From positions 34,090,322 to 34,154,321 of the forward strand of contig NC_052154.1 of the NCBI RefSeq assembly GCF_902713615.1: DNA of 64,000 nucleotides, written 5' to 3'. Position 1 is the stretch's first letter. The number at the start of each line of letters is the position of its first letter. Below, in pieces: positions 36,451 to 59,700 of this stretch. The DNA comes from Scyliorhinus canicula. Taxonomy: Eukaryota. Both the position numbers and the translations under genes were made by a program. A model generated the notes under the pieces. The model was not told where the DNA came from and did not search any database. It saw only the letters and a program-made list of their open reading frames with translations.

Positions 36451-39400
36451 CTTTGCCGTATCCAGTGTCTTCAGCCGTTTCTTGATATCCTGTGGAGTGA
36501 ATCGAATTGTCTGAAGACTGACGAGGAGGCCGAGATGGATCATCCATTCGGCACTTCTAGCTGAAGTTCTGGCTCCTCTCCCAGTGAGTTGTTTAATTGT
36601 TCACCACCATTCATAGCTGAATTAAATTCCAAACCTTAAGGCCTGGGCAAGGGAAGCGCATGGTCGCCAATCATAAAGCATCGAAAATTCCGGATGCGGG
36701 AACTGGAGAAGCGCAGAGATCTCAGAGAGCCTTAAACTCAGCACCAAGTCTAGCTCTCACCTACATATGTAAAGGACCTAATGCCGGGAAGCATTCAATG
36801 CCAGTTCCAGACTTGCAAAGAAGGCAAGAATTTCTGGACAACTGGGTAACCCTAATCGGCAGGGGCATTATTGCTGTTCCGCCTTGTCAGCCATGTTGTG
36901 CACAGCAAGATCCCACAAGGAGCAGTGACTTGAATGACAAGTTAACCACTTTTGATGGTCTTTCATTGAGGTGAGGGGGGGTGCGAGGATAGCTGGTTGA
37001 TGACCAGGAGAATTTCCCTTACATTAGTGGAGCAGGAGCAGTGAGAAACAGAATGGGTGGCCATTCAATTGAAATCTCAGCTACATGTGCACCTGCTTCC
37101 AATGAACGGAAGCTGAAATAACACAATGATGCTCCACATTCCATTTTCTATCATTGCCACATGATTCACGCTGGATGTAATTCATCTTCATGTAAAATGG
37201 TCACGCATTGTTGCCACACAAAATATACCTTCAAAGGGTCTCATTTCTGAATTAATTTAAATATGTTTTGCTCACAGCCGGCCAGTGCTTGGCCTTTCTG
37301 GTGTTGTTCCTCCCCTCCATTTGTTCAAGACCACAATGAGTTTGCATCACTTAGTGGAAGAAAGGAATATACACTGGAGAAAGGCTAAGAAGATGATGAT
37401 ACTGAGGCAGCAGTACTCTCCATGAAAGATACAGTGACTAACATACTCCTAGCTCCACCTGGCCACAAAACCGCTGTGCCATTAAGTCAAGTGAGTGTTT
37501 TAACCCCATGTACAGTTCGATCACAAAACACCCTTTTTAATCTGCTGCCAAGAAGTAGAATATTTCAGAAATCGTGAATAGGGTTTTGTTCCTGTGTACA
37601 GGAAGTGAAATCTTGTGAGTTTAGATTGACGACATCACCGCAACCTACAACGAGAGCCCTGCCAGTTTCCAAAATAACTTGATCCACTTAGTTACCAGAG
37701 TAAATGTTTCCAAAACATCTTTTTTATCCTGAAATCAAAGCAGAAAATTTCAGAACTCTCATAACATCTGGAGCTGCATCACTTCAAAGTCAAGAGTCAA
37801 AGTCAGCTTTTTCCCTCTGCAAACTGCTTACTTTAAAGTAATTTCCTAAAAGTCACAGCAATGATGGAATAGTTTTTAAAAATACACAATTCTGAGGTTT
37901 ATGTTTTTTGCTCGTAACTATGGCATTGATGTCTGGAGCTTTCTGCCACAACTGTCATGACTTTTCCTCAGATGTCCTCGCCTTCACCAGGTAACAGACC
38001 AGTTCCCATTCTCACTGCCTCCTCTGGTGCCTCTGTCATCTCAAATCCCATGGCTTTAGTTCTGAATGTTCTCCAGGAACACTAGGCCTTGCCATCCATT
38101 GCTGAGTCGGGTTTGACAGTTTCACGGTGTACAGGTCACTCCCATGCTACCAGATAGCAGAAACAATTCCAAATCTCTCTTCTCGAGGACAATTAGGAAG
38201 TCGTATTAAATGGCTGATAGTTTGTTTCAAATCTCCCATTTTACACTATCTAATGTATGGCACACTAGGTTTTCCTTTTCACTGAACTCAATGGAATGAA
38301 ATTCGAGAGGGGCATATAGTAGAGCAATATTTTCAATTATTAGCTGGGAGTATGTTGCTATTTTCAGAGTCCCTGAGAATGTGTACATTTTTGGAAGGGG
38401 TCCCGGTGCATCAGTATTAGCTATTTTCCAAGAGTATGTCAATATTAGCACAGAGATTGATTGATTTATTTATTGTCACATGTGCCAAAGTAGAGTGAAA
38501 AGTTTTTTTTTGTAGCCAATGGAACGTAGAGTACATACACAGTAAACAGAAAGAATAATCAACAAAGTACATCAACAAATAGTACATCGACAAATACTGA
38601 TTGGTTACAGTACAGAAAAAGGGGTCAAACAAAGCAAATACATGAGCAAGAGCAGCATAGGGCGTCGTGAATAGTGTTCTTACAGTGAACAGATCAGTCC
38701 AAGGGAGAGTCGTTGAGGAGTCTTGCAGCTGTGGGGAAGAAGCTGTTCCTATGTCTGGGATGTGCGGGTCTTCAGTCTTCTGTATCTTCGGCCTGATGGA
38801 AGGGTCTGGAAAAGGGCAAAGAGGGGTATCTGACAATGCTGTCTGCCTTCCTGAGGCAGCGGGAGGTGTAGACAGAATCAATGGGAGGATGGCAAGCTTG
38901 TGTGATGCGTTGGGCTGAGTTCACCACACTCTGCAGTTCCTTGAGATCTTGGGCCGAGCAGTAATGCAGCCAATAGGATGCTCTCTATGGCACAACTGTA
39001 GACCTTTGTGAGAGTTGATGCAGACATGCCGAATTTCTTTAGGGGTATCTGACAATGCTGTCTGCCTTCCTGAGGCAGCGGGAGGTGTAGACAGAATCAA
39101 TGGGAGGATGGCAAGCTTGTGTGATGCGTTGGGCTGAGTTCACCACACTCTGCAGTTCCTTGAGATCTTGGGCCGAGCAGTTGTCATACCAAGCTGTAAT
39201 GCAGCCAATAGGATGCTCTCTATGGCACAACTGTAGACCTTTGTGAGAGTTGATGCAGACATGCCGAATTTCTTTAGCTTCCGGAGGAAGTAGACATGCT
39301 GTTGGGTTTTCTTGACTGTAGCATCAACGTGAGTGGACCAGGATAAACTGTTGCTGATGGTGACCCCCAGGAACTTAAAGCTATTGACTATTTCCACTTA

Positions 39401-39639: not shown

Positions 39640-41360
39640 GACCATAAGACGTAGAAGCAGAATTAGACCACTCGGCCCCTCGAGTCTGCTCCACCATTCA
39701 ATCATGGCTGATATTTTTCTCATCCCTATTCTCCTGCCTTCTCCCCATAATCCTGATCCCCTTATTAATCAAGAATCTATCTATCTCTGCCTTAAAGACA
39801 CTCAGTGATTTGGCCTCCACAGCCTTCTGCTCCAAAACGTTCCACAGATTCACCATCTTTTGGCTGAAGAAATTCCTCCTCATCTCTGTTTTAAAGGATC
39901 GTCCCTTTTGTCTGAGATTGTGTCCTCTGCTTCTAGTTTTTCCTAAAGTGGAAACATTCTTTTCACATCCACTCTATCCAGGTCTCGCTGTATCCTGTCA
40001 GCTTCAATAAGATCCCCTCCATCCTTCTAAACTCCAATGAGGACAGAGACAGATTCCTCAACCGTTCCTCATACGACAAGCTCTTCATTCCAGGGATCAT
40101 TCTTGTGAACCTCTTCTGGACCCTTTCCAAGGCCAGCACATTCTTCTATAGATACTGAACCCACAAAATGCTCACAGTACTCGAAATTGGGCTGACCAGA
40201 GCCTTATATAGCCTGAGACGTATATCCCTGGTCTTATATTCTAGCCCTCTCGACATGAATGCTAACATTGTATTTGCCCTCCTAACTGCCGACTGAACCT
40301 GCATGTTAACCTTAGCAGAATCATGAACAAGGACTCCCAAGTCCCTTTGTGCTTCTGATTTCCTAAGCATTTCTCCATTTAGAAAATAGTGTATGCCTCC
40401 ATTTCGCCTTCCAAAGTGCATAACCTCACACTTTTCTACATTGTATTCCATGTGTCACTTCTTTGTCCACTCTCCGAGCCTGTCCAAGTCCTTCTGCACC
40501 CCGCCTGCCTCCTCAATACTATCTGTCCACCTACAGGTCTCTGTATCATCTGCAGAGTTAGCAAGTGTGTTCAGTTCCTTCTTCCAGATCATTAATGTAT
40601 GTTGTGAAAAGGTGTGGCCCCAGCACAGACCCCTGAGGCACACCACTAGTCACTGGCTGCCATCTTGAAAAAGACCCCTTTATCCCCACTCTGCCTTCTG
40701 CCAGTCAGCCAATCCTCTATCCATGCCAGGATTTTATTGTTAACACCATGGGCTTTTAACTTATTTAATAGTCTCCATGCGACACCTTGTCAAAGGCCTT
40801 CTGGAAATCTAAATAAATCACGTCCACTGGTTCTCCTTTCTCTAACTTCCTTGTTACTTCCTCAAAGAACTCTAACAGATTTGTCAGACATGACCTCCCC
40901 TTGACGAAGCCGTGCTGACTCCGTCCTATTTTATCATGCACTTCCAAGTACTCTGCGATTTCATCTTTAATAATGGACTCTAAAATCTTACCAATGACCA
41001 AAGACAGGCCAGCTGGCCTATAATTTCCCACCTTCTGCCTCCCTCCCTTCTTAAACAGCGGTGTTACATTAGCCACTTTCCAGTCCTCTGGGACCCTTCC
41101 TGCCTCCAGTGATTCCTGAAAGATCATCACCAATGTCTCCACAATCTCCTCGGCTATCTCTTTTAGAACCCTGGGGTGTAGTCCATAGGTCCAGGTGACT
41201 TATCCACCTTCAGACCTTTCAGTTTCCTGAAAACCTTCTCCTTAGTGATGGTCACTGCACTCACCTCTGCCCCCGATTCTACTGGAGCTCTGGCATTCCA
41301 TTGGTATCTTCCACCGTGAAGATTGTTGTAAAGTAACTATTCAGCTCCTCTGCCCTTTCT
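39640..41360 (-). mobile_element. CR1 LINE ORF2 3' part nested in Rex1
   Basis: PEDWKVANVTPLFKKG, QHGFVKGRSCLTNL, DVIYLDFQKAFDKV, ADDT, YNVEKCEVMHFG; tail TCTTATGGTCTTA. Confidence 0.93.
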
Positions 41361-42723: not shown

Positions 42724-44240
42724 GAGCTTAGTCTATGTACAGCAGTCTGATGTAAGTGTCCTTGTTGTCGAGGTGTTTGAGTTTTAATTGTGGGGCCAGG
42801 GAGATAGCATCTGCTGTGGAGCTATTGCGACAATAGGCGAACTGCAGTGGATTGAGACCGTCTGGGTGCCTGACCTGGGACGACCCTGGGAATGCGACAA
42901 GAGTTGCAGGGTCGCTCCACACAAGAAGGTGTAAATAGGGATTAACATATTCAGATTATGGAGATTGCATACATGGCAAAAAAACCTTATGAATAGTCAT
43001 GCAACATTTTCAGCATGCCACTAATAATAATATCATTAGCCCAAGGTTCATTGAAGTGAAATAGAAACTATAATGTCGCTATTATAAGCAGCTGCACCAA
43101 GCATTTGTGTGGGGACCACAAAAGAGGCAGTAAATTAGAGAGAAAGAAAATCATACAAGTTGTTCCTTACTGTATTTATGCTGTAAAGGCTGAGATTTTC
43201 CAATCCCAGGAATCATCACGAGTAGGATGAAGGGGGAGAGAGGGATTTGGGGCGTAAAGTTAGTTAAGTTTGTAAAAGCGGACTTCTGGCGGCAGATGTG
43301 AGCGGAGGATTCACATCTGGGGACACCCCGACCTGACCCGATTCGCAAAGCGTCTATAAATCGCGCTAGCAGTAAAAATAACAAAATTAAAGGGACACCG
43401 GGGAAATATACAGTTTCAAACCAAACATGCTAAAAATTAAGAACAAGAGAGTGGGGAGCCAGATGTGCTCTTCAGACTCGGAGGCTTCATTGGAGTCGGG
43501 AGGAGACAAAATGGCGGCGGTGTGCTCCTCCCCCCCCCCAGGCAGCCGCGTGGCCATCAATTAAAGACATGAGCCGCATGTGCTTAAACGATTTGATCAG
43601 CATTGCTCCCCTAGAAAAAACGAAACATTCAACGCTATAAATTCCATGCACGCACCCAGAACGTGAGAGAGGCATTCGATAACTTCCTCACTGACTTACG
43701 ATTGAAAGCGCAGTCGTGCAACTTCAGCACACTCCAGTTGTCAATGATACGAGACCAGATAGTTTTTGGAATCTCCAATAATAAAGTGAGTGAGCAGCTA
43801 CTGCGGGAAACAGACCTACAACTTGAAAGTGCCATTCAAATATGACACGCTAGTGAGCTGGCTGAAAAGTAACTACGGTTGAATGCCCATAGTTTTGCCG
43901 CAAAGGCAGAAGAGGCGGCAGACACCATTAGTGTGGTGACGCAGCTGAATAAGAATTGTGCTCCCAGTGCGGGTGGCCATTATGATATGCCAGCGATGTG
44001 GCATTCAACATTTACCATGTCCAGCTTTTGGACTGATCTGTTCCTAATGCGGCAGAGCAAACCACTTTGCGAGGCAATGTTTTTCACATCCAACAGTAGA
44101 TCAAACAGCATCAATTAACATGATTGACTAGATGTGCATCGAAGACCTGTTATAATTTTGACTGAGGGCACAGAATGAGAGTTTCTCAGAGGAGCGAAAG
44201 GTGTAAGTTACTTGAGCGTCTGTACATTTCAGACAGCGCT

Positions 44241-45235
44241 GCGACTAAGGATGAATGCAAATGGCAACAAGATGAAGTGGAGGAGTTATCAGATGAAATG
44301 GAAAAAAAAGGTCAAGGTGGAGGAAGAGAAAAAAGATGGAGAAAAGGAGGAGCCAATAGGAATTCCAGAATTCTGGTTGACAATCTTCAAAAATGTGGAT
44401 TTGCTCAGTGACATGACACGAGCATAATGAGCCTACCTTAAAGCATTTACAAGATTTAAAGGTGAAATTTTCAGGTCCTGGACAGTCAATGAGTTTTACT
44501 CTGAAGTTTAAGTTTGAGCCAAATGAGTAGTTAAAAAATGAAGCAGTGACAAAAACATACCAGATGGAGTCGCAGCCTGAGTCAGACTTTTACTTCTTTG
44601 ATGAACCGCCAGATCGACTGGAAGAAAGGAAAAAACATCACATTGAAAACCATGGAAACAAAGCAGACGAATAAGGCGAGCACTGGTAGAACAGTTACAA
44701 AAACTGTACCATATGTCTCTTTAATTTTTCTAGTCCCCCTGAAGCTCCAGAGCATGGAGAGTTGGATGAAGGTTCTGCAGCTGGCTTTGAAATTGGTCAC
44801 TTCTTCCATGAACACATAATTCCACAAGCAGTGTTATACTTCAGAGGAGACGCTTTTATAATAATAATAATAATTGCTTATTGTCACAATGAATGATCTG
44901 TTGAGCTGCTTGCAGAAAAATACTTTTCGCTGTACCTCGGTACACGTGACAATAAACAAATCCAATCCAATCCACAAGGAGGCTTCAATGAAGTTACTGT
45001 GAAAAGCCCCTAGTCGTCCCATTCCGGCACCTGTTCAGGGAGGCCGGTACGGGAATCAAACCCGCGCTGCTGGCATTGTTCTGCATTACAAGCCAGCTGT
45101 TTAGCCCACTGTGCTAAACCAGCCCCATTTTGCAGGCGATAATGATGATTATGATGATGATGATTACGACGATAACGATTATGAGGAGGAATGTGAAGAA
45201 TCAGATGATGAGCCAGAAGAGGAAGACTATGAAAG
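44241..45235 (+). pseudogene. nap1l1: Intronless nucleosome assembly protein 1-like 1 fragment (degenerate)
   Basis: ECKW...EEKKDGEKEEPIGIPEFWLTIFKNVDLLSDM...LKHLQDLKVKFS...FEPNE...QIDWKKGKNITLKT...RTVTKTV...GFEIGHF..HIIPQAVLYFRGDA plus an acidic tail; contains stops and frameshifts; SINE inserted at 44857-45126. Confidence 0.93.
44857..45126 (-). mobile_element. tRNA-SINE (variant head, tail Z) with a nested plus-strand Rex1 3' fragment (44890-44973)
   Basis: SINE tail split at GTCACAA by ...CTGTACCTCGGTACACGTGACAATAAACAAATCCAATCC; ACAA duplicated. Confidence 0.85.
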
Positions 45236-47574
45236 TCTATTTAGTTTATTTGGCATTAGGGATGAGGTGATAACAAGCAGCATCCAATCTGTGCAGGACA
45301 ACGATAAGTGAAAGTTCCAAGATGGAGTGTGCAGAGGCAGAAAGTGAGATTGCAAAAAGCAGACAAATTAGCAGAGAGAAAATCAACTGCAAAAAGCCAC
45401 TGGTAACCGAAGAAATAATCCCCATTCTGGAGAAATTGGCTCCAGAGAAGTACGATGAATTATCCTGTGCCCACAAAATGGTTCCTGCAGTGGATTCCCC
45501 AGTACTCGAGGTCAGTCCATCAAAAAACTTGCAGGAAGAACAGATCTTCGTGCAGTTCTCCAACAAAAGACGGAGCATGTATTGTTTTATCAGATAAGGA
45601 TGAGCCACTAATTCAGACCAAAGCACAAAGTGAAGAAGTAATGCCTAATGTTGAGGACATTGATCCAGCTAAGACACCGGAATTCAAGGGTTTGCAGATC
45701 ATTGATGAAGTCGCAAACTTGCCTGCAACTGCAAGAGCACCCAAAAGTATGCCACAACTAGATGCCTCACCAGTTGATGGGCATGCAGTACAGCACTCGA
45801 GCACAAGCACCATGGATCAACCAAAACTCCTCAATCCTGCAAAAGATCCAGCAACAGCTAATCCCTTGGGCGAGACTAGTAGCAAGAATTATGCTCTGGG
45901 TTCACAGGCAGATGCGAGTGTGAACAGTACCAATTCCAGGGATTATGGCACTAAAGCCAAGTAGAAAAGGAGAAAGAAAAAGCATCATTTCAAAAGTTTC
46001 AAAAGGCTGATAGAGTTGGTGACTCAAAGACCAGAAAGAAAACTGGTCCTTCAAAAAAAGAAACAAGATTACGTATTCGGCCAATGCTCAGGAGACGAAC
46101 CAGAATATGGTGTTAACCTGAAAGATTGAACATGTAGTGAACTGTGCACAGGGTCACATGTATATAGTTATTCATATCATGTTGAAATGTGAAAAATAAT
46201 TTAACGCTTGTAAATTATTTTCTTTTACAAAGGAATGGGGATGCGATGATATGCATGATGTAAATTTGTAAATATTATGCATGAACTCCGACCACTGGGT
46301 GGCATTGTAAACACCATGTGATCTGGGAGTTGGGAGTTGGTCATGCTGGGAGATAGATGTATTTGCAGTAGTTCCACGGGAGTTGTTTAGTGTTAATTGT
46401 TAGTTTATTTATCCTAGTTATCTCACCACACAGTTTGTTCTATAATAAATTATTTTAAACTACATGTTCTGTCGTTCATCATTCACTTCGGCCAGAAGAC
46501 AATATTAATGGCATAGCTTTGAAAGAAAGATCCTTGAGAAAAGAGAGTAATTGAGGTAGTATTAACACTATTATCATGGATGTGAGCACATAGAGTGGCA
46601 CAATTGCCTTCCTCATGAACAGCATTGACATTATCATCATTTAAACATCATTTTAATTTAACTATCAATGGGATCCTATGTTTTGGAGCCACTTATGTCC
46701 TTTAATGCTCTCTTGGGCCAAAAGAGAAGGCGCGAGGTACTCCAATAATAATGTTGCCTTATCATGTAGTAATCAGCAAGAATGCCTGGGAATAAGTTCT
46801 CTCTGACTTTCCTTTCCTTCACTGAGAAGATGCCTTCTATTTTCTCAGTGTCTTCACACAGCAGCTTGGCCAAGATTTTGAAAATTATATGTAGAGAATC
46901 ATAGTTGTGCCAAGGACTCTGTGGTATAACACACCGGTGCTTCAAATGTACTGCATCATTACAATCAAACCAAACTTTGGATTCAGTAACATCAACCTTG
47001 AACCAACATTAAATTGCCCTAAATACCTAGGCCTGTGTCTAAATTGCTCACATACACATCAACACATTAATCTGTCACGCTATCGCCTAACTGTGTAATA
47101 TAGCCAGGTTCACTCAGTTGGCTAGACAGCTGGTTCGTGATGCAGAGGCCAGCACCGCAGGTTCATTTCCCGTACCTGAGGGTCAAAAAAGGAATCTTTA
47201 TTTCCCCTTGTTCCACAATTTCATCCAAACTGCTATAAGTGTGTCAAATAGATATCAGTACTACAACTGTGGGTGGCAAATCTAATGTCACAAAGTGGGT
47301 GGTGAGTTCTGCTGATAAAGAACTGCTGACTTCAACAATGATCAGTAAAGATCAGTAAAACATTATCTATACAACCTACTCTTTATAAGATAACTGCGAC
47401 TTTGAACAACTTTTCACACAATCACGTGTGTGCTGGTGAGTGACTTTATTTAACCTATTCCAACATTTTCCTGTACCTTCAACCCAACCAGGTCATATTG
47501 CTTCCTGATTTCGAACTTCATTTCAGTTGTCCAACTGTTTTTATTGTAATGCTCAACAAACATACAACATGGGC

Positions 47575-48004: not shown

Positions 48005-49825
48005 ACATTTAAAAAAAAATATTTTTAACTTTCTATTTTTGACTTTCTAACATTTTAAACATAAAACAAAACAATGTAAAACAACAAGAACAGCAGAAGC
48101 CTCCCCCCTCCCCCCCACTTTACCAACCAACACCCCAATAACTCAAAGAATAGCACCCCCTCATCACCACCCCATCCCCTCTCTCCCTAGCAGATCAAGC
48201 GTAGCGATTCTTGGCCTTTTGGCTAAGATGAGCGTCGGATCAGGTATAATGCCTGGATCTGGTATCTCTCGCTTGTGGAGACCATGAATTGGATTCAATT
48301 TGAATTGGTTTTTGGAGCAGGCGAGGAGCTGCATTAGGGGTTTGCCCCTGTCCACACTCTGAGCTCTGGCTTTGTAACTCTGATAAAGTAATAAAGTGAA
48401 GAATAAACAGACCCCATTTCTCAGGGAACCTCCCAATCGCCCCCCCCCCCCCTCCCCCCCCCCCCCCCCCCCCCCCCCCCACTTCAAGGTAAACATAACC
48501 TTCTCCAGATACTGGAACTCCATTAGGTCCCCAAGCCATGCTGAGGCACAGGGTGGAGAGACTGACCCCCAACCCACCTGGACCCCTCTGTGAGCAATCA
48601 GCAAGGCCACCTTTAACTGTATTAACCCCAGTCTCATACACACAAAGTTGAGACATTCACCCTCTGTAACAGCTCATAGCACAACCCTCCTCCAATGCCA
48701 CCCTCAGCTTCTCCCCCCACTTGGCCTTAACCCCCTCCAGTGTGATGTGTTGGGTAAGCTGGGTCTGCGAGGACTGCGTTTACTGCAGCAGTGAGAGAGA
48801 CAGGCTTCCAACACTTGAAGAAATGCAACTCGATTTTATTGAACTCTTAACTATCATACATACTTTAACTGTGGGTTGACACTATGCTGACTTGACTGGA
48901 GACCTGAGGCTAACCTGACCGGACTATCTTACTACCACATGGTGTATGTTCTAGTTGTTGCTCACGGGCTCTGACTGTCTCAGAGGCTGAATCCCAAGAG
49001 AGCGGGAAAACTACCGCCCTCTGGCTTTATAGTGGTCGTGTCCTGTCTGGTGATTGGCTACTGTGTTCTGTGTGTTCATTGGTCATCCTGTGTGTCAATC
49101 ACTGCTTGTCTGTGCACCATCATATACTTGTGTGTATATTATGACACAGTGATGCCATGTCCTTCTCCAGAATTTTCCCATAAATCGCCAAGATGCCCCC
49201 CTCTCCAACCCCATCACCGACAACACCCACTCCCACAAAGAGGAGGGAGATGTCACCGGAAACGCCAGGAAAACCTTCCTTTTCTTTTTAAAGATAATTT
49301 ATTGCAGATATATTCAAATATATACAGAAACAGAAAGACTCAAAGAGCCATGACAAACAACAATGTAGTAAGATATCTACACTAATTATAAACATTCCCT
49401 CCTGACTCCTCCTTTTTATCCAGTATAACCCTCGATCACATCCCCCCTTCTCCCTTAACAAAGATACGTTCAGACTAATTAACCCATTTTGCCCAAGCAG
49501 AATAGATTTTATGTGTTTGCTTTACAGGTAACTGCAATCATGTTCATATGTTTTGGTCCTGTCCAAAGGATTAGTGGAAGGAGGTTTTTAGGGTAATCTC
49601 TAAAGCGGTGCACATGAAACTGGACCCGGGCCCTCGGGAGGCCATATTCAGGGTATTGGACCAACCGGGGTTGGAAACGGGCGCGGAAGCAGATGTGGTA
49701 GCCTTCGCCTCGTTGATTGCCCAAAGCCGGCTCCTGATGGGATGGAGAGCAACCTCTCCCTCTATGGCCTGGCGTGGCGGGGGGACCTGCAGGAATTCTT
49801 GACGCTTGAAAAGGTCAAATTTGAT
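48005..49825. mobile_element. L1 3'-end remnants (two fragments in opposite orientations)
   Basis: RLGLIQLKV and SAWLGDLMEFQYLEKV on minus; EAIFRV..FASLIAQSRLLMGWR..GDLQEFLTLEKVKF on plus. Confidence 0.65.
48743..49146 (-). mobile_element. Solo LTR (404 bp)
   Basis: TG...CA ends; TSD CAGTG on both sides; minus-strand TATAAA and AATAAA. Confidence 0.82.
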
Positions 49826-56714: not shown

Positions 56715-59700
56715 TCGTGTCTTAATAAAGCTCGTAGTCTCAAAGGTGGAGAAGATGCTTTATGGTGAATTTGTTCTCTCTTCAGAGCTTAACTTACGGC
56801 CACCTCAAATGCTGCCTGCCTGTGTGTCTGTGTCCTGCTACGAGTTCTGCCTTCCGTGAAGTGTCTCGTCACTTCCTGTCCCTGTGCATATATAGCTCTC
56901 CCGTGCTCCCTCTAGTGCTTGCTCAGTTGTATTGCGTCTAGTCAGATCTACAATCACCACATCCCCCCTTTTTTCTTTACATATTTTCTGTACATTGTTA
57001 AAGAAAATTGTACAAAACAGTTAGATTACTTACGGTATGTGTATCTATACAAGAGATGGTGCTATTGCATATTTTACAAAGCCAATTTATATTTGAGTCC
57101 AATCTTAATAAAAACATTTATGAGTCCAAACTTGATGAATTTGTTCACTGAGTTTTTTCTTTTGTTGTTGTTGACGCGGTGAATGTTGTCGGTGTTCTTG
57201 TTATTTTAAGTAACCAATGCGTCATCCCGAGGTGTTTGCATGGTCGAACCACTGATGTTGACTGACATGGACTTTTTTCTGTGTTTGTGGTATCGATTTA
57301 TTATGTCATCTGCCTTGAAAGCTGGTGTGCTTGCTTGTTCTGGAGCAGATGTGAGTTTGTGCGATTCGCTGTCATCCCATGGCATGTTTGTAGTCTTGTC
57401 ATTGCTTTGCAGTGTGCTGTGGCATTGTCCTTCATGTGCAGCGTTGTACCATTTTGTACAAGCCGTTGTTTCATTGCTGTTGTTTCTGTCGTTCCTGTCT
57501 TTGTTGTTTTCGTTGCCGTTCTTGTTGCTGTTTTTGTCGTTTCTGTCTTTGTTGTTGTCGCTATCTTTGTTATGCTTCTTGTTGGTTTTATTGTTCTTCT
57601 TGTAGTTTTTGTCGTTGTGCTTGTAGTTTTTGTTGGTGGTCTTGTTGTTCTTGTTTCTGCAGTGCTTCTTGCGATTTTTGTTGTTCTTGTCCCGCTTCAT
57701 GTTGCTTTTGTTCTTGCTGTTGTTGTTCTCGTTTCTGCTGTGCTTCTTTTGCCTTTTGTTTTTCTTATTATGCTCAATGAGTGTCCAGTGTGGATAATTT
57801 GAGTCATTGAACGTTTCGTCTCGAGAATGGTGAGAATGATCTGATGTTGCATTGATGCTGGTGACATCAGTCATTTGTGGTGGATTTGATTCGTCGTCTT
57901 TGCTTTCTTGGTGCTCCTCTTCTGGAGTCAAATTCTTCACGATTTCATTTGACGCGGTCTCTCTGGACTCTTGGTGCTCCTCGTCCCGAGTCAAAATCTT
58001 CATGATTTCTGTTGATGTGGTCTCACTGGACTCTTGGTGCTCCTCTTCTGGAGTCAAAATCTTCATGGTTTCTGTTGATGTGGTCTCACTGGACTCTTGG
58101 TGCTCCTCTTCTGGAGTCAAAATCTGCATGGTCTCTATTGGCATGGTCTCTCTGGACTCTTGGGTGGCCCTACTCTGTGCTTCTGTACAGACAAGCTGAG
58201 AACTGTCAGTCTCACTGTGATCCTGTACCTCCTGTATGTCGAGTGTGATCACCTTGTCACTGTTTCTGCATGCAGTGGATATATGTACATTGTCTTCTTC
58301 TTGTTTATGTGAGCTTGGTAGACTTTCATAGTCTGCGTGCGGTTGCTCAGATACGGCGGGTTGACCTTCATGGTCTTGTTCATGCATGGTGTTCGCCAGG
58401 GAGTGTTTGCTTGCTTCCCTTTTGGAGTCTTTCATCACTCTCACTGTGGAGCCTGTCATCGCTCTCTCTGTGGAGTCTTTCTGTGCTCTCTGTGTGGCGT
58501 TGTCTTCGTCTTGGGTATTGCTGTCATCCAATTTATCGACGATCTGCCATGGCACCATGGTGTTGGATTCATCTACCACGAGTAGATTCGTGTTGAGCTT
58601 TGCGACCGTGTCGCTGATGCTGTGATCAACATATCCGAATAACTCAGCCATGTCTGAGTAGTATTCTTCGAAAACCAAATCATCTTGGTTGGATTCATCT
58701 ACCACGAGTAGATTCGTGTTGAGCTTTGCGACCGTGTCACTGATGCTGTGATCAGCATATCCGAATAACTCAGCCATGTCTGAGTAGTATTCTTCGAAAA
58801 ACAAATCATCCTTTTTTGTTTCGGATTTTTTTTTGTTCTCTTCACTTTGGGTGGTGCAGACTGCTTTTTCCAGGGTGTTGTGCAAGTTGTTTTTAACTGC
58901 TGGTTTAAGTTCAGGTGTTTTTTTGTCTTCTGAGGCAAGAAAGTTTGGTTTTACCGCTTTAAGTATCTTGTTTTCAATTATCGGGCATTTCCCTTTTAAG
59001 TAGGCGTGGTTCGGATGTTCAGACGTCATGACGCTCGTGACGTCATGCGTAGGAATCAATTGCGCATGCGGAAATCGGCCTTCCTTCACTGTGCGGTTTT
59101 GTGTCCACTGCGAATGCGCGGCATTGCGCATGCGCATGACGATCAGCAACACAAACATTTTTAAACTGCGCATGCGCGGCTGGCGCATGTACAGAACGAT
59201 AAACGGGTGATTGTAACTGCGCATGCGCGGCTTCCGTTTCCTGCGCATGCGCAGATGAGGTTTTTTGTTCCTTGTGTGCCCGAGACTATAAAATGTGGTC
59301 CAACGCCATTTTATCGCGGATTTCAGCGTTTTTTCTTTCTGAAAGTTGTAAGTTACCTTTTCCTTTTGATCTGGACTGGATTTCAGCGTTTGGCTTTGTG
59401 AAAAATTCTAGGTATTTCTTCTTTTTGATCTGTACTTTTCACTCGCGATTTCTTGACTGAAGCCTTTCTGTTTGTAGAGTTTTGCATCACTCAGTCTCTG
59501 TGCAGTTTGGCCTCTGAGCATACCGTGCTGTTCAAATTCCTTACAGTACTCTTCAAATTTGTTTAGTATTGTTTGTAAGTTGTTGCTGTCTTCAGCTTTT
59601 GAGTATTTAAATCCATTATATACTTTCCTAGCTTCAATGTCCTGTGATGAGCATTGCTATTTTAATTTCGTCTGAGGCTGCTGCTACATCATTAGCTATG

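What the first reader, a model, noticed from the sequence alone, without database searches (positions are those of the whole stretch)
43635..46508. Host histone chaperone (NAP1L1) cDNA sitting where pol should be in a Gypsy-type LTR element
Seen: on one strand, Gypsy gag with two zinc knuckles is followed within ~150 bp by an intronless NAP1L1 segment (from about the ECEW motif to the acidic tail). Then come a disordered region, a basic patch (KRRKKKHHFK), the Gypsy polyprotein end motif (LRRRTRI..PERLNM*), a PPT and an LTR. PR, RT, RNase H and the IN core are absent. The NAP1 piece has no 3' UTR or poly(A), and once the later SINE is removed its acidic tail reads in frame into element sequence (EEDYESLFSLFG). 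Inference: this is transduction of a host mRNA segment into a retroelement ORF, giving a Gag-NAP1 fusion, rather than an ordinary processed pseudogene. Such a fusion could affect chromatinisation of element DNA. This copy is dead (stops, frameshifts) and its 5' LTR is not visible.
Basis: partly seen in the sequence, partly recalled or inferred. Interest (0 to 1): 0.9.

Follow-up and report, generated by a model that had tools for sequence, protein, structure and literature searches.

The report
Shark jumping gene carrying host gene pieces
This is an old, broken copy of a many-copy shark retrotransposon whose copying enzymes were replaced by pieces of two host chromatin genes (NAP1L1 and CHD6): a clear animal example of a known process, with no sign here that the cargo works.

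Summary
On the + strand, a Gypsy-like gag fragment with two CCHC knuckles (43580-44095) is followed about 150 bp later by an intronless NAP1L1 segment. This segment matches human residues about 127-346 plus the acidic tail (44241-45230) and is split by a SINE. Then come 0.9 kb of non-pol sequence and a repeated terminal block ending near 46508. No protease, RT, RNase H or integrase is present.

Reads from two species decide the main question. The flanks are single-copy. The gag, NAP1, downstream and terminal parts are each covered by dozens of diverged contigs. Contigs from several copies cross the upstream-to-NAP1 junction, the tail-to-downstream junction and both edges of a second host piece. 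So this is not a one-off processed pseudogene. It is a member of a non-autonomous LTR family that carries captured host sequence.

New here: 45758-45925 derives from the N-terminus of host CHD6. The short knuckle-to-NAP1 linker is private to this copy. The 3' end and flank are shared with a second species.

The copy has at least 6 frameshifts and 5 stops. Nothing supports a working Gag-NAP1 protein. The scan had already noted the same family on at least 9 other pieces of this genome, one of them followed up.

The parts
43580..43866 (+). Gag core, 5'-truncated. The N-terminal part of gag, the PBS and the 5' LTR are missing.
   Evidence: tblastx to L002 gag gives 59% identity over 86 aa. P0025 hit at E 1.6e-13. 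Other copies start aligning at 43580-43584, and the locus's own unique contig ends at 43619.
43988..44095 (+). Two CCHC zinc knuckles. The first is shortened and the second is interrupted by a stop at 44045-44047.
   Evidence: Translation. Pfam zf-CCHC and zf-CCHC_5 are weak. tblastx to the L002 knuckle region covers 44018-44089. Most other copies have another letter at 44045.
44096..44240 (+). Linker between the knuckles and the NAP1 cargo. The stretch from about 44152 to 44199 is private to this copy, probably an internal deletion of the protease-like region seen in other copies.
   Evidence: Depth is 0 at 44160-44199 in three of four runs, and only the locus's own contig covers it in X2. 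Other copies resume at 44212 with a shared loose end.
44241..44856 (+). Spliced NAP1L1 cDNA fragment, matching human residues about 127-346. At least 4 frameshifts and 1 stop.
   Evidence: Pfam NAP profile positions 63-266 in four frame pieces. PDB phmmer best hits are NAP1L1. The high-depth RNA that I read as host NAP1L1 mRNA aligns from 44248.
44857..45127 (-). SINE inserted later into the NAP1 fragment.
   Evidence: Several other copies in the window at 81-92% identity. Depth about 10^6. ARAGORN finds no intact tRNA.
45128..45230 (+). NAP1L1 acidic C-terminal tail. The last ~15 residues of NAP1L1 are absent.
   Evidence: Translation. The frame is continuous with 44856 once 271 nt are removed. 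Contigs of other copies run from 45186 into the downstream part.
45231..45757 (+). Cargo stretch of unknown origin (X1). It is open for about 90 codons in one frame, with 1 stop and 2 frameshifts in this copy.
   Evidence: No Pfam match and no homologue. Multi-copy: 14-57 contigs per run at listed sites.
45758..45925 (+). Block derived from the N-terminal coding region of host CHD6, about residues 30-85.
   Evidence: Representative search hits ray CHD6 at residues 16-90. BLASTP E 2e-12. Smith-Waterman score 118 against 31 +/- 5 for shuffles. blastn gives 67% to a ray CHD6 mRNA contig. The species' own RNA aligns at 45759-45922.
45926..46138 (+). Lys/Arg-rich stretch and the end of the element's reading frame (RRRTRI..PERLNM, then a stop). 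Two stops and a frameshift.
   Evidence: Translation. Similarity to the CHD6 basic region is marginal: 49 against 33 +/- 5, with 5 of 300 shuffles reaching it. Bridged by other copies at 45866-46242 and 45853-46145.
46139..46508 (+). 3' terminal repeat block, the putative 3' LTR. Its start is uncertain (46135 or about 46330). An AATAAA lies at about 46446.
   Evidence: Depth is 170-1140 against 3 in the flank. Unique-flank contigs begin at 46477/46479. A contig from the second species joins this end to the same flank (X13 record 16).

Best explanation
**What it is.** This is an old, dead, 5'-truncated copy of a non-autonomous Ty3/Gypsy-like LTR retroelement family.

**How it arose (inferred).** In the founder, reverse transcriptase switched templates among co-packaged RNAs. 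Almost all of pol was replaced by host sequence:
- a spliced NAP1L1 mRNA fragment that lacks the N-terminal 126 residues (on human NAP1L1 numbering) and the C-terminal end;
- a stretch of unknown origin;
- a block from the 5' coding region of CHD6.

**How it spread (inferred).** The chimera kept gag and the 3' end of the element, including the terminal repeat. Enzymes of autonomous relatives could therefore copy it in trans. It spread to dozens of copies before the two sampled species split.

**State of this copy.** It later lost its 5' part and the stretch between the knuckles and NAP1, received a SINE, and accumulated frameshifts and stops.

**The cargo.** It is most likely a passenger with no function.

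**Shown versus inferred.**
- Shown: the anatomy, the host origin of the NAP1L1 and CHD6 pieces, multi-copy status, shared junctions, presence in two species, and decay.
- Inferred: template switching, trans-mobilisation and passenger status.
For: - **Anatomy:**
- **NAP1L1 identity and extent:**
- **Spliced origin:** about 600 nt of the NAP fragment match the Pfam profile in order without introns. DNA contigs of other copies are equally intronless, for example 44220-44503.
- **CHD6 origin:**
- **Multi-copy status:**
  - Flanks 42947-43387 and 46622-47062 have depth about 3 in X1, while 43535-46508 has 24-1140.
  - Dozens of distinct contigs overlap single sites, for example 27/63/56 contigs at 44383, 28/54/57 at 45260 and 22/35/43 at 45614 in X1/X2/X13.
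- **Shared junctions:**
  - Nine contigs each in X2 and X11 start aligning at 44212 with the same upstream loose end. This is about 30 nt before NAP1 homology begins.
  - Contigs span 45186-45426, 45195-45544 and 45199-45567 (acidic tail into X1).
  - Contigs span 45547-45809 and 45550-45842 (X1 into CHD6).
  - Contigs span 45866-46242 and 45853-46145 (CHD6 to the element end).
- **Gypsy-type relative:** L002 runs gag, then RVT_1, then RT_RNaseH_2.
- **Age:** other copies differ from this one by 13-20%. The second species' contig across the 3' end and flank differs by about 4%.
- **Known mechanism:** LTR-mediated retroposition, with multi-parent chimeras and secondary retroposition, is described in PMC5131818.
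- **Other windows:** independent, unchecked notes on at least 9 other pieces of this genome describe the same gag-protease-NAP1L1 architecture.
Against: - No 5' LTR, PBS or TSD is available, so transposition of this copy cannot be shown directly.
- No contig bridges gag or the knuckles to NAP1 in another copy. In my own data, gag's membership of the NAP1-carrying family rests only on similar depth; the rest comes from other readers' unchecked notes.
- Summed contig depth is not a copy number.
- The origin of X1 is unknown.
- The start of the LTR and the PPT are weak.
- Passenger status is judged from this one decayed copy. Some of its defects are absent from most other copies, so an earlier functional phase is not excluded.
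Confidence: 0.78

Rival explanations
1. The chimeric frame (Gag, then a protease-like part, then the NAP1 core and acidic tail, then downstream cargo with CHD6 N-terminal sequence) encoded a working protein while the family was spreading. For example, it might have brought histone-binding activity to the element's particles or its new DNA. The family's success would then have depended on the cargo.
For: - The NAP1 fragment keeps the globular histone-binding part and the acidic tail.
- Once the SINE is removed, the tail reads in frame into the downstream stretch.
- Several defects of this copy, including the stop in the second knuckle and a frame break at 45543, are absent from most other copies.
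- In the only 30-nt stretch where the family's majority can be compared with what I read as host NAP1L1 mRNA, both differences are synonymous (loose ends at 44416).
- Both identified cargo pieces come from chromatin genes.
Against: - This copy has at least 6 frameshifts and 5 stops.
- The captured NAP1 lacks the N-terminal 126 residues. From general knowledge of NAP1 structures, not tested here, that part contains the long dimerisation helix.
- No predicted protein from any family copy appears in a library of 1.8 billion representatives or in the word-index searches.
- An earlier follow-up on another copy judged the cargo to be decaying freely (unchecked).
- Two synonymous changes are far too few to count.
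Confidence: 0.12
2. A chance mosaic (a dead Gypsy fragment, a NAP1L1 retrocopy and other debris) was multiplied at the DNA level by segmental or tandem duplication, not by retrotransposition as an element.
For: - No LTR pair or TSD is seen at this locus.
- Depth alone cannot tell dispersed copies from duplicated blocks.
Against: - The repeated unit ends sharply at a terminal block that is itself several-fold more abundant than the interior, as expected for LTRs and solo LTRs.
- The flanks on both sides are single-copy.
- Copies are 13-20% diverged and occur in two species.
- Notes from other windows describe LTR-bounded copies on other pieces of the genome (unchecked).
Confidence: 0.07
3. A single LINE-mediated processed pseudogene of NAP1L1 happened to land inside a dead Gypsy element.
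For: NAP1L1 is highly expressed: RNA depth over the fragment is 800-2800. Such genes often leave retrocopies.
Against: - There is no poly(A), no 3' UTR and no TSD at the fragment's ends.
- The fragment is truncated at both ends within the coding region.
- Both junctions are shared by many diverged copies in two species.
Confidence: 0.03

Closest known systems
LTR-mediated retroposition chimeras in animals (Tan et al. 2016, Genome Res, PMC5131818)
   Same: A partial, intronless host mRNA copy sits inside discontinuous LTR-retrotransposon sequence. It has no poly(A) or LINE hallmarks and is truncated within the coding region. [quoted passage not shown]
   Different: The cases there are young and single- or low-copy. 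This family is old, has dozens of diverged copies in two elasmobranch species, and retains gag. Microsimilarity at the switch points could not be checked here.
Maize Bs1 (an LTR element carrying exon pieces of three host genes), as summarised in PMC5131818
   Same: A pol-less LTR element whose interior combines partial exonic sequence of several host genes. [quoted passage not shown]
   Different: Bs1 is a plant element with 1-5 copies. This one is a vertebrate element with far more copies, and its cargo comes from NAP1L1 and CHD6.
Acutely transforming retroviruses (Gag-onc fusions) (from general knowledge)
   Same: Replication genes are replaced by spliced host cDNA joined to gag. Spread depends on a helper.
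   Different: There is no evidence of selection for the cargo or of any phenotype. This is a germ-line Ty3/Gypsy-like element, not an infectious retrovirus.
Host NAP1L1
   Same: The source of 44241-45230. The best matches among solved structures are human NAP1L1, at E 1e-12 to 1e-15 for pieces of 41-47 aa.
   Different: The fragment lacks residues 1-126 and the C-terminal end, has no introns, is frame-broken and is multi-copy.

Membership tests
Ty3/Gypsy (Metaviridae-like) LTR retrotransposon | Gag with CCHC zinc knuckle(s) related to gag of elements that carry Gypsy-type pol | tested here: met
   59% aa identity to the gag of contig L002, which continues into RVT_1 and then RT_RNaseH_2/RT_RNaseH. 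Two knuckles lie at 43988-44080.
Ty3/Gypsy (Metaviridae-like) LTR retrotransposon | Pol with PR-RT-RNase H-IN in that order | tested here: not met
   No pol domain in any frame piece of 43300-46200. Nothing matches L002 beyond 44089. The element is therefore at most a non-autonomous derivative.
Ty3/Gypsy (Metaviridae-like) LTR retrotransposon | Two LTRs with TG..CA ends, PBS, PPT and a target-site duplication | tested here: inconclusive
   No second LTR copy in the window. There is a repeated 3' terminal block ending about 46501-46508. The PPT is weak, and the 5' end is missing, so PBS and TSD cannot be seen.
LTR-mediated retrocopy / gene-carrying non-autonomous LTR element | Intronless partial host mRNA copy embedded between LTR-element sequences, without poly(A) or LINE-type TSD | tested here: met
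   NAP profile positions 63-266 are contiguous. Gag lies upstream and the terminal repeat downstream. No poly(A).
LTR-mediated retrocopy / gene-carrying non-autonomous LTR element | The same switch points in all copies (secondary retroposition of one founder) | tested here: met
   Shared alignment start at 44212 with a common loose end in 9 contigs each of X2 and X11. Several contigs per species cross 45230, 45759 and 45922.
LTR-mediated retrocopy / gene-carrying non-autonomous LTR element | Microsimilarity between element and host mRNA at the fusion points | not testable with these tools
   This needs the autonomous parent's sequence and the full host mRNAs. Only 30-nt loose ends of the host RNA were available.
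NAP/SET histone chaperone (functional member) | Complete NAP domain, including its N-terminal part, in an open frame | tested here: not met
   The first 62 profile positions and residues 1-126 are absent. There are at least 4 frameshifts, a stop and a SINE inside the domain. That the missing part holds the dimerisation helix is from general knowledge.
LINE-mediated processed pseudogene | 3' UTR plus poly(A), flanking TSD, independent single insertion | tested here: not met
   No poly(A) or UTR. No direct repeat was found around the fragment. The junctions are multi-copy.

The most novel reading that the evidence does not exclude
While it was spreading, the family encoded a working fusion of Gag with the histone-binding core and acidic tail of NAP1L1, plus CHD6 N-terminal sequence. 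The retroelement would thus have carried its own chromatin-handling module, and its spread to dozens of copies would have depended on it.
Probability: 0.1. Interest if true: 0.8.

Novelty: new member of a known kind. Interest (0 to 1): 0.45.

Why it matters
- **A well-documented vertebrate case.** Here an LTR retroelement swapped its enzymes for spliced host sequence and then multiplied as a non-autonomous family. Most animal examples are young and single- or low-copy.
- **Composite cargo.** Pieces from at least two host genes show repeated template switching, that is, exon shuffling by an LTR element.
- **Annotation of shark genomes.** These copies can be mistaken for NAP1L1 or CHD6 paralogues or pseudogenes.

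Tried and rejected
- **LTR pair or other family copies in the window:** none found. Only the SINE repeats.
- **Origin of X1 (45231-45757):** no Pfam match and no homologue. The window stretch just before the CHD6 block does not match CHD6.
- **Family copies as predicted proteins:**
  - The exhaustive search with 45545-45961 returned only CHD6 and unrelated repetitive proteins.
  - The search with a NAP piece returned no candidates. No second copy's DNA could therefore be fetched.
- **Continuation of CHD6 homology beyond the block:**
  - Upstream it is not significant at protein level. By my own hand count, 16 of 30 nt match the host RNA's loose end.
  - Downstream, into the basic patch, it is marginal and BLASTP finds nothing.
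- **tRNA in the SINE:** ARAGORN finds none.
- **Literature on NAP1L1 capture or sharks:** nothing found.
- **Bacterial-type promoter scan of the terminal block:** uninformative.
- **'Gypsy pol end motif':** could not be tested, because the only relative fetched (L002) ends within RNase H.
Full report
**1. What is in the sequence**

All features below lie on the + strand.

- **Gag.** Gag-like coding sequence starts at about 43580.
  - The piece 43615-43842 found a Logan protein, P0025, at E 1.6e-13.
  - Its contig L002 carries a gag that is 59% identical over 86 aa to window 43609-43866, plus a knuckle region matching 44018-44089.
  - L002 then continues into RVT_1 and RT_RNaseH_2/RT_RNaseH. 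That is the gag-(PR)-RT-RNase H order of Ty3/Gypsy-type elements.
  - The window has nothing matching L002 beyond 44089.
- **Zinc knuckles.** Two CCHC knuckles lie at 43988-44080.
  - The first is shortened.
  - The second is cut by a stop at 44045-44047, and Pfam support is weak.
- **NAP1 segment.** Four reading-frame pieces between 44179 and 44893 match Pfam NAP (PF00956) profile positions 63-101, 103-138, 169-213 and 212-266, in order and without introns.
  - Among solved structures the best matches are human NAP1L1.
  - On the numbering of the 391-residue chain, 44241 corresponds to about residue 127, 44302-44418 to residues 147-185, and 44717-44854 to residues 297-346.
  - The N-terminal 126 residues and the last ~15 residues are therefore absent.
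- **SINE.** 44857-45127 lies on the minus strand.
  - It has several other copies in the window and a read depth near 10^6.
  - It splits the NAP fragment from its acidic tail (45128-45230).
  - Its length of 271 nt restores the frame.
  - No poly(A) or 3' UTR follows the tail.
- **Downstream of the tail.**
  - A 0.5-kb stretch with no detectable relatives (X1, 45231-45757).
  - A CHD6-derived block (section 3).
  - A Lys/Arg-rich stretch.
  - The frame end RRRTRI..PERLNM* at 46138.
  - A terminal repeated block.
- **Pol and decay.** No PR, RT, RNase H or IN domain is present. From 43580 to 46138 this copy has at least 6 frameshifts and 5 stops.

**2. One-off or family?**

I laid Logan contigs of two DNA runs of the source species (X1, X2), DNA of a second species (X13, later X11) and one RNA run (X16) on 42800-47200 and on 43860-44440, at 80% or more likeness.

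- **Flanks are single-copy.** In X1, 42947-43387 and 46622-47062 have depth about 3.
- **The element is multi-copy.** Everything from about 43535 to about 46508 is far above the flank level. In X1:
  - gag: 175-227;
  - NAP1 part: 121-219;
  - X1 and CHD6 block: 113-217;
  - terminal block: up to 1142.
- **Distinct contigs, not just depth.** Summed depth is not a copy number, but the number of distinct contigs at single sites is also large. In X1/X2/X13 it is 27/63/56 at 44383, 28/54/57 at 45260 and 22/35/43 at 45614.
- **The copies are diverged.** The other copies differ from this one by 13-20%, for example 39 differences in 240 nt and 46 in 263 nt.
- **Junctions recur.**
  - Nine contigs each in X2 and X11 begin to align at 44212, about 30 nt before NAP1 homology starts. 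They share one upstream loose end.
  - Contigs cross from the acidic tail into X1 at 45186-45426, 45195-45544 and 45199-45567.
  - Contigs cross from X1 into the CHD6 block at 45547-45809 and 45550-45842.
  - Contigs cross from that block to the element's end at 45866-46242 and 45853-46145.
- **Where host mRNA homology starts.**
  - I read the high-depth RNA contigs over the NAP1 part as host NAP1L1 mRNA. They were not identified independently.
  - They align only from 44248.
  - Their upstream loose end translates to the expected NAP1L1 residues and is unlike the window.
- **Conclusion.** The 'single LINE-made retrocopy' scenario is contradicted.

**3. The second host piece**

- An exhaustive profile-free search with 45545-45961 returned CHD6 of rays (residues 16-90) and a cluster of Logan CHD6 N-terminal fragments.
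- Pairwise BLASTP gives E 2e-12.
- A Smith-Waterman score of 118 compares with 31 +/- 5 for shuffles, for 45758-45925.
- blastn to a ray CHD6 mRNA contig gives 67% identity over 45763-45925.
- RNA of the source species aligns at 80% or more over the same 45759-45922. Its loose ends on both sides translate to CHD6-like sequence that the window does not share.
- The block is thus a discrete piece of about 164 nt of CHD6 coding sequence. Its extension is uncertain:
  - upstream it is not significant;
  - into the basic patch it is marginal.
- The CHD6 region is present in rays, so I infer the direction as host to element.

**4. Features private to this copy**

- No other copy covers 44160-44199. 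Depth there is 0 in X1, X13 and X11, and only the locus's own contig covers it in X2.
- Copies of the knuckle block stop at about 44151. NAP1-carrying copies have other sequence upstream of 44212.
- One 931-nt RNA contig has about 450 nt upstream of that point that match nothing in the window.
- Other readers' notes describe gag-protease-NAP1 on other pieces of this genome. Together with these, the data suggest that this copy lost the protease-like stretch by an internal deletion.
- The stop in the second knuckle and a frame break at 45543 are also absent from most other copies.
- The 5' part of gag, the PBS and the 5' LTR are missing. Unique sequence begins just left of about 43580.

**5. Ends and age**

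- Unique-flank contigs start at 46477 (second species) and 46479 (source species). That is about one assembly word inside the repeat, so the element ends at about 46501-46508.
- The second species' contig (46477-47146, 26 differences in 655 nt) joins this end to the same flank. It runs into the same downstream high-copy repeat, which I take to be a SINE.
- I infer that the insertion predates the split of the two species, which are about 4% diverged here. The family's spread is older still, given 13-20% divergence between copies.
- The start of the LTR is uncertain. It could be 46135, just after the stop, or about 46330, where depth jumps nearly sevenfold.

**6. Mechanism**

- The anatomy fits LTR-mediated retroposition. 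In that process reverse transcriptase switches between the element's RNA and co-packaged host mRNAs.
  - The products are chimeras flanked by discontinuous element sequence.
  - They sometimes combine several parental genes, and they can undergo secondary retroposition (PMC5131818).
- This chimera kept gag and its 3' terminal sequences, so autonomous relatives could mobilise it in trans. That step is inferred.
- RNA contigs over the family have summed depths of 12-240, against 0-3 in the flanks. Spread over dozens of copies, this is little above background, so it is no evidence of specific expression.

**7. Function**

- Nothing here supports a working Gag-NAP1 protein. The captured piece lacks the N-terminal 126 residues, which from general knowledge contain the dimerisation helix. 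This copy is also thoroughly broken.
- No predicted protein of any family copy exists in the libraries searched.
- The one hint the other way is very small. In the 30 nt where the family's majority can be compared with what I read as host NAP1L1 mRNA, both differences are synonymous.
- I put a functional phase at about 0.1.

**8. Standing**

- The scan has met this family before, on at least 9 other pieces of this genome. One was followed up, with the same overall verdict.
  - read-based evidence for multi-copy status and shared junctions;
  - the CHD6 piece;
  - the shared 3' end and flank in a second species;
  - the private deletion that creates the apparent gag-NAP1 adjacency here.
- It is a new member of a known kind.

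Noticed in passing
window 44310 -> 45199 (joint): One family copy lacks almost the whole NAP core, with 21 other letters at the joint. It appears as a 931-nt contig of depth 23 in the RNA run and as a single contig of depth 4.7 in DNA run X2. That one copy seems to be in RNA well above the flank background of 0-3.
   Followed up: partly
window about 44781: The high-depth RNA that I read as host NAP1L1 mRNA encodes four residues (EAIL) between LDE.. and ..FEIGHF that this copy lacks, a 12-nt gap. Human NAP1L1 also has them. I did not establish whether the gap is private or family-wide.
   Followed up: partly
L002:1-3052: A Logan contig from another run carries a decayed autonomous-type relative (gag, a 158-aa ORF with no Pfam match, RVT_1, RT_RNaseH_2). 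Its gag is 59% identical to the one here. The species is unknown.
   Followed up: partly
window 43388-43579: A low-copy repeated stretch with a C-run lies directly upstream of the truncated gag. It is neither gag-like nor single-copy (depth 12-55 in X1). Its nature is unknown.
   Followed up: no
window 57209-59248 (-): An open 680-aa ORF with no Pfam match, inside what another first-reader note calls a young pol-less LTR element. It has no similarity to the element studied here.
   Followed up: partly
window 40768-41142 (-): A reverse-transcriptase fragment (RVT_1, E 9e-10), probably from a LINE (type not tested), next to SINE copies.
   Followed up: partly
window 38822-39277: Two near-perfect direct repeats (141 nt at 100% and 89 nt at 98%) spaced 219-235 nt apart, indicating a recent local tandem duplication.
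   Followed up: no
window 48432-48492: A long C-rich/poly-C tract. On the minus strand it reads as a Gly run within chance ORFs.
   Followed up: no
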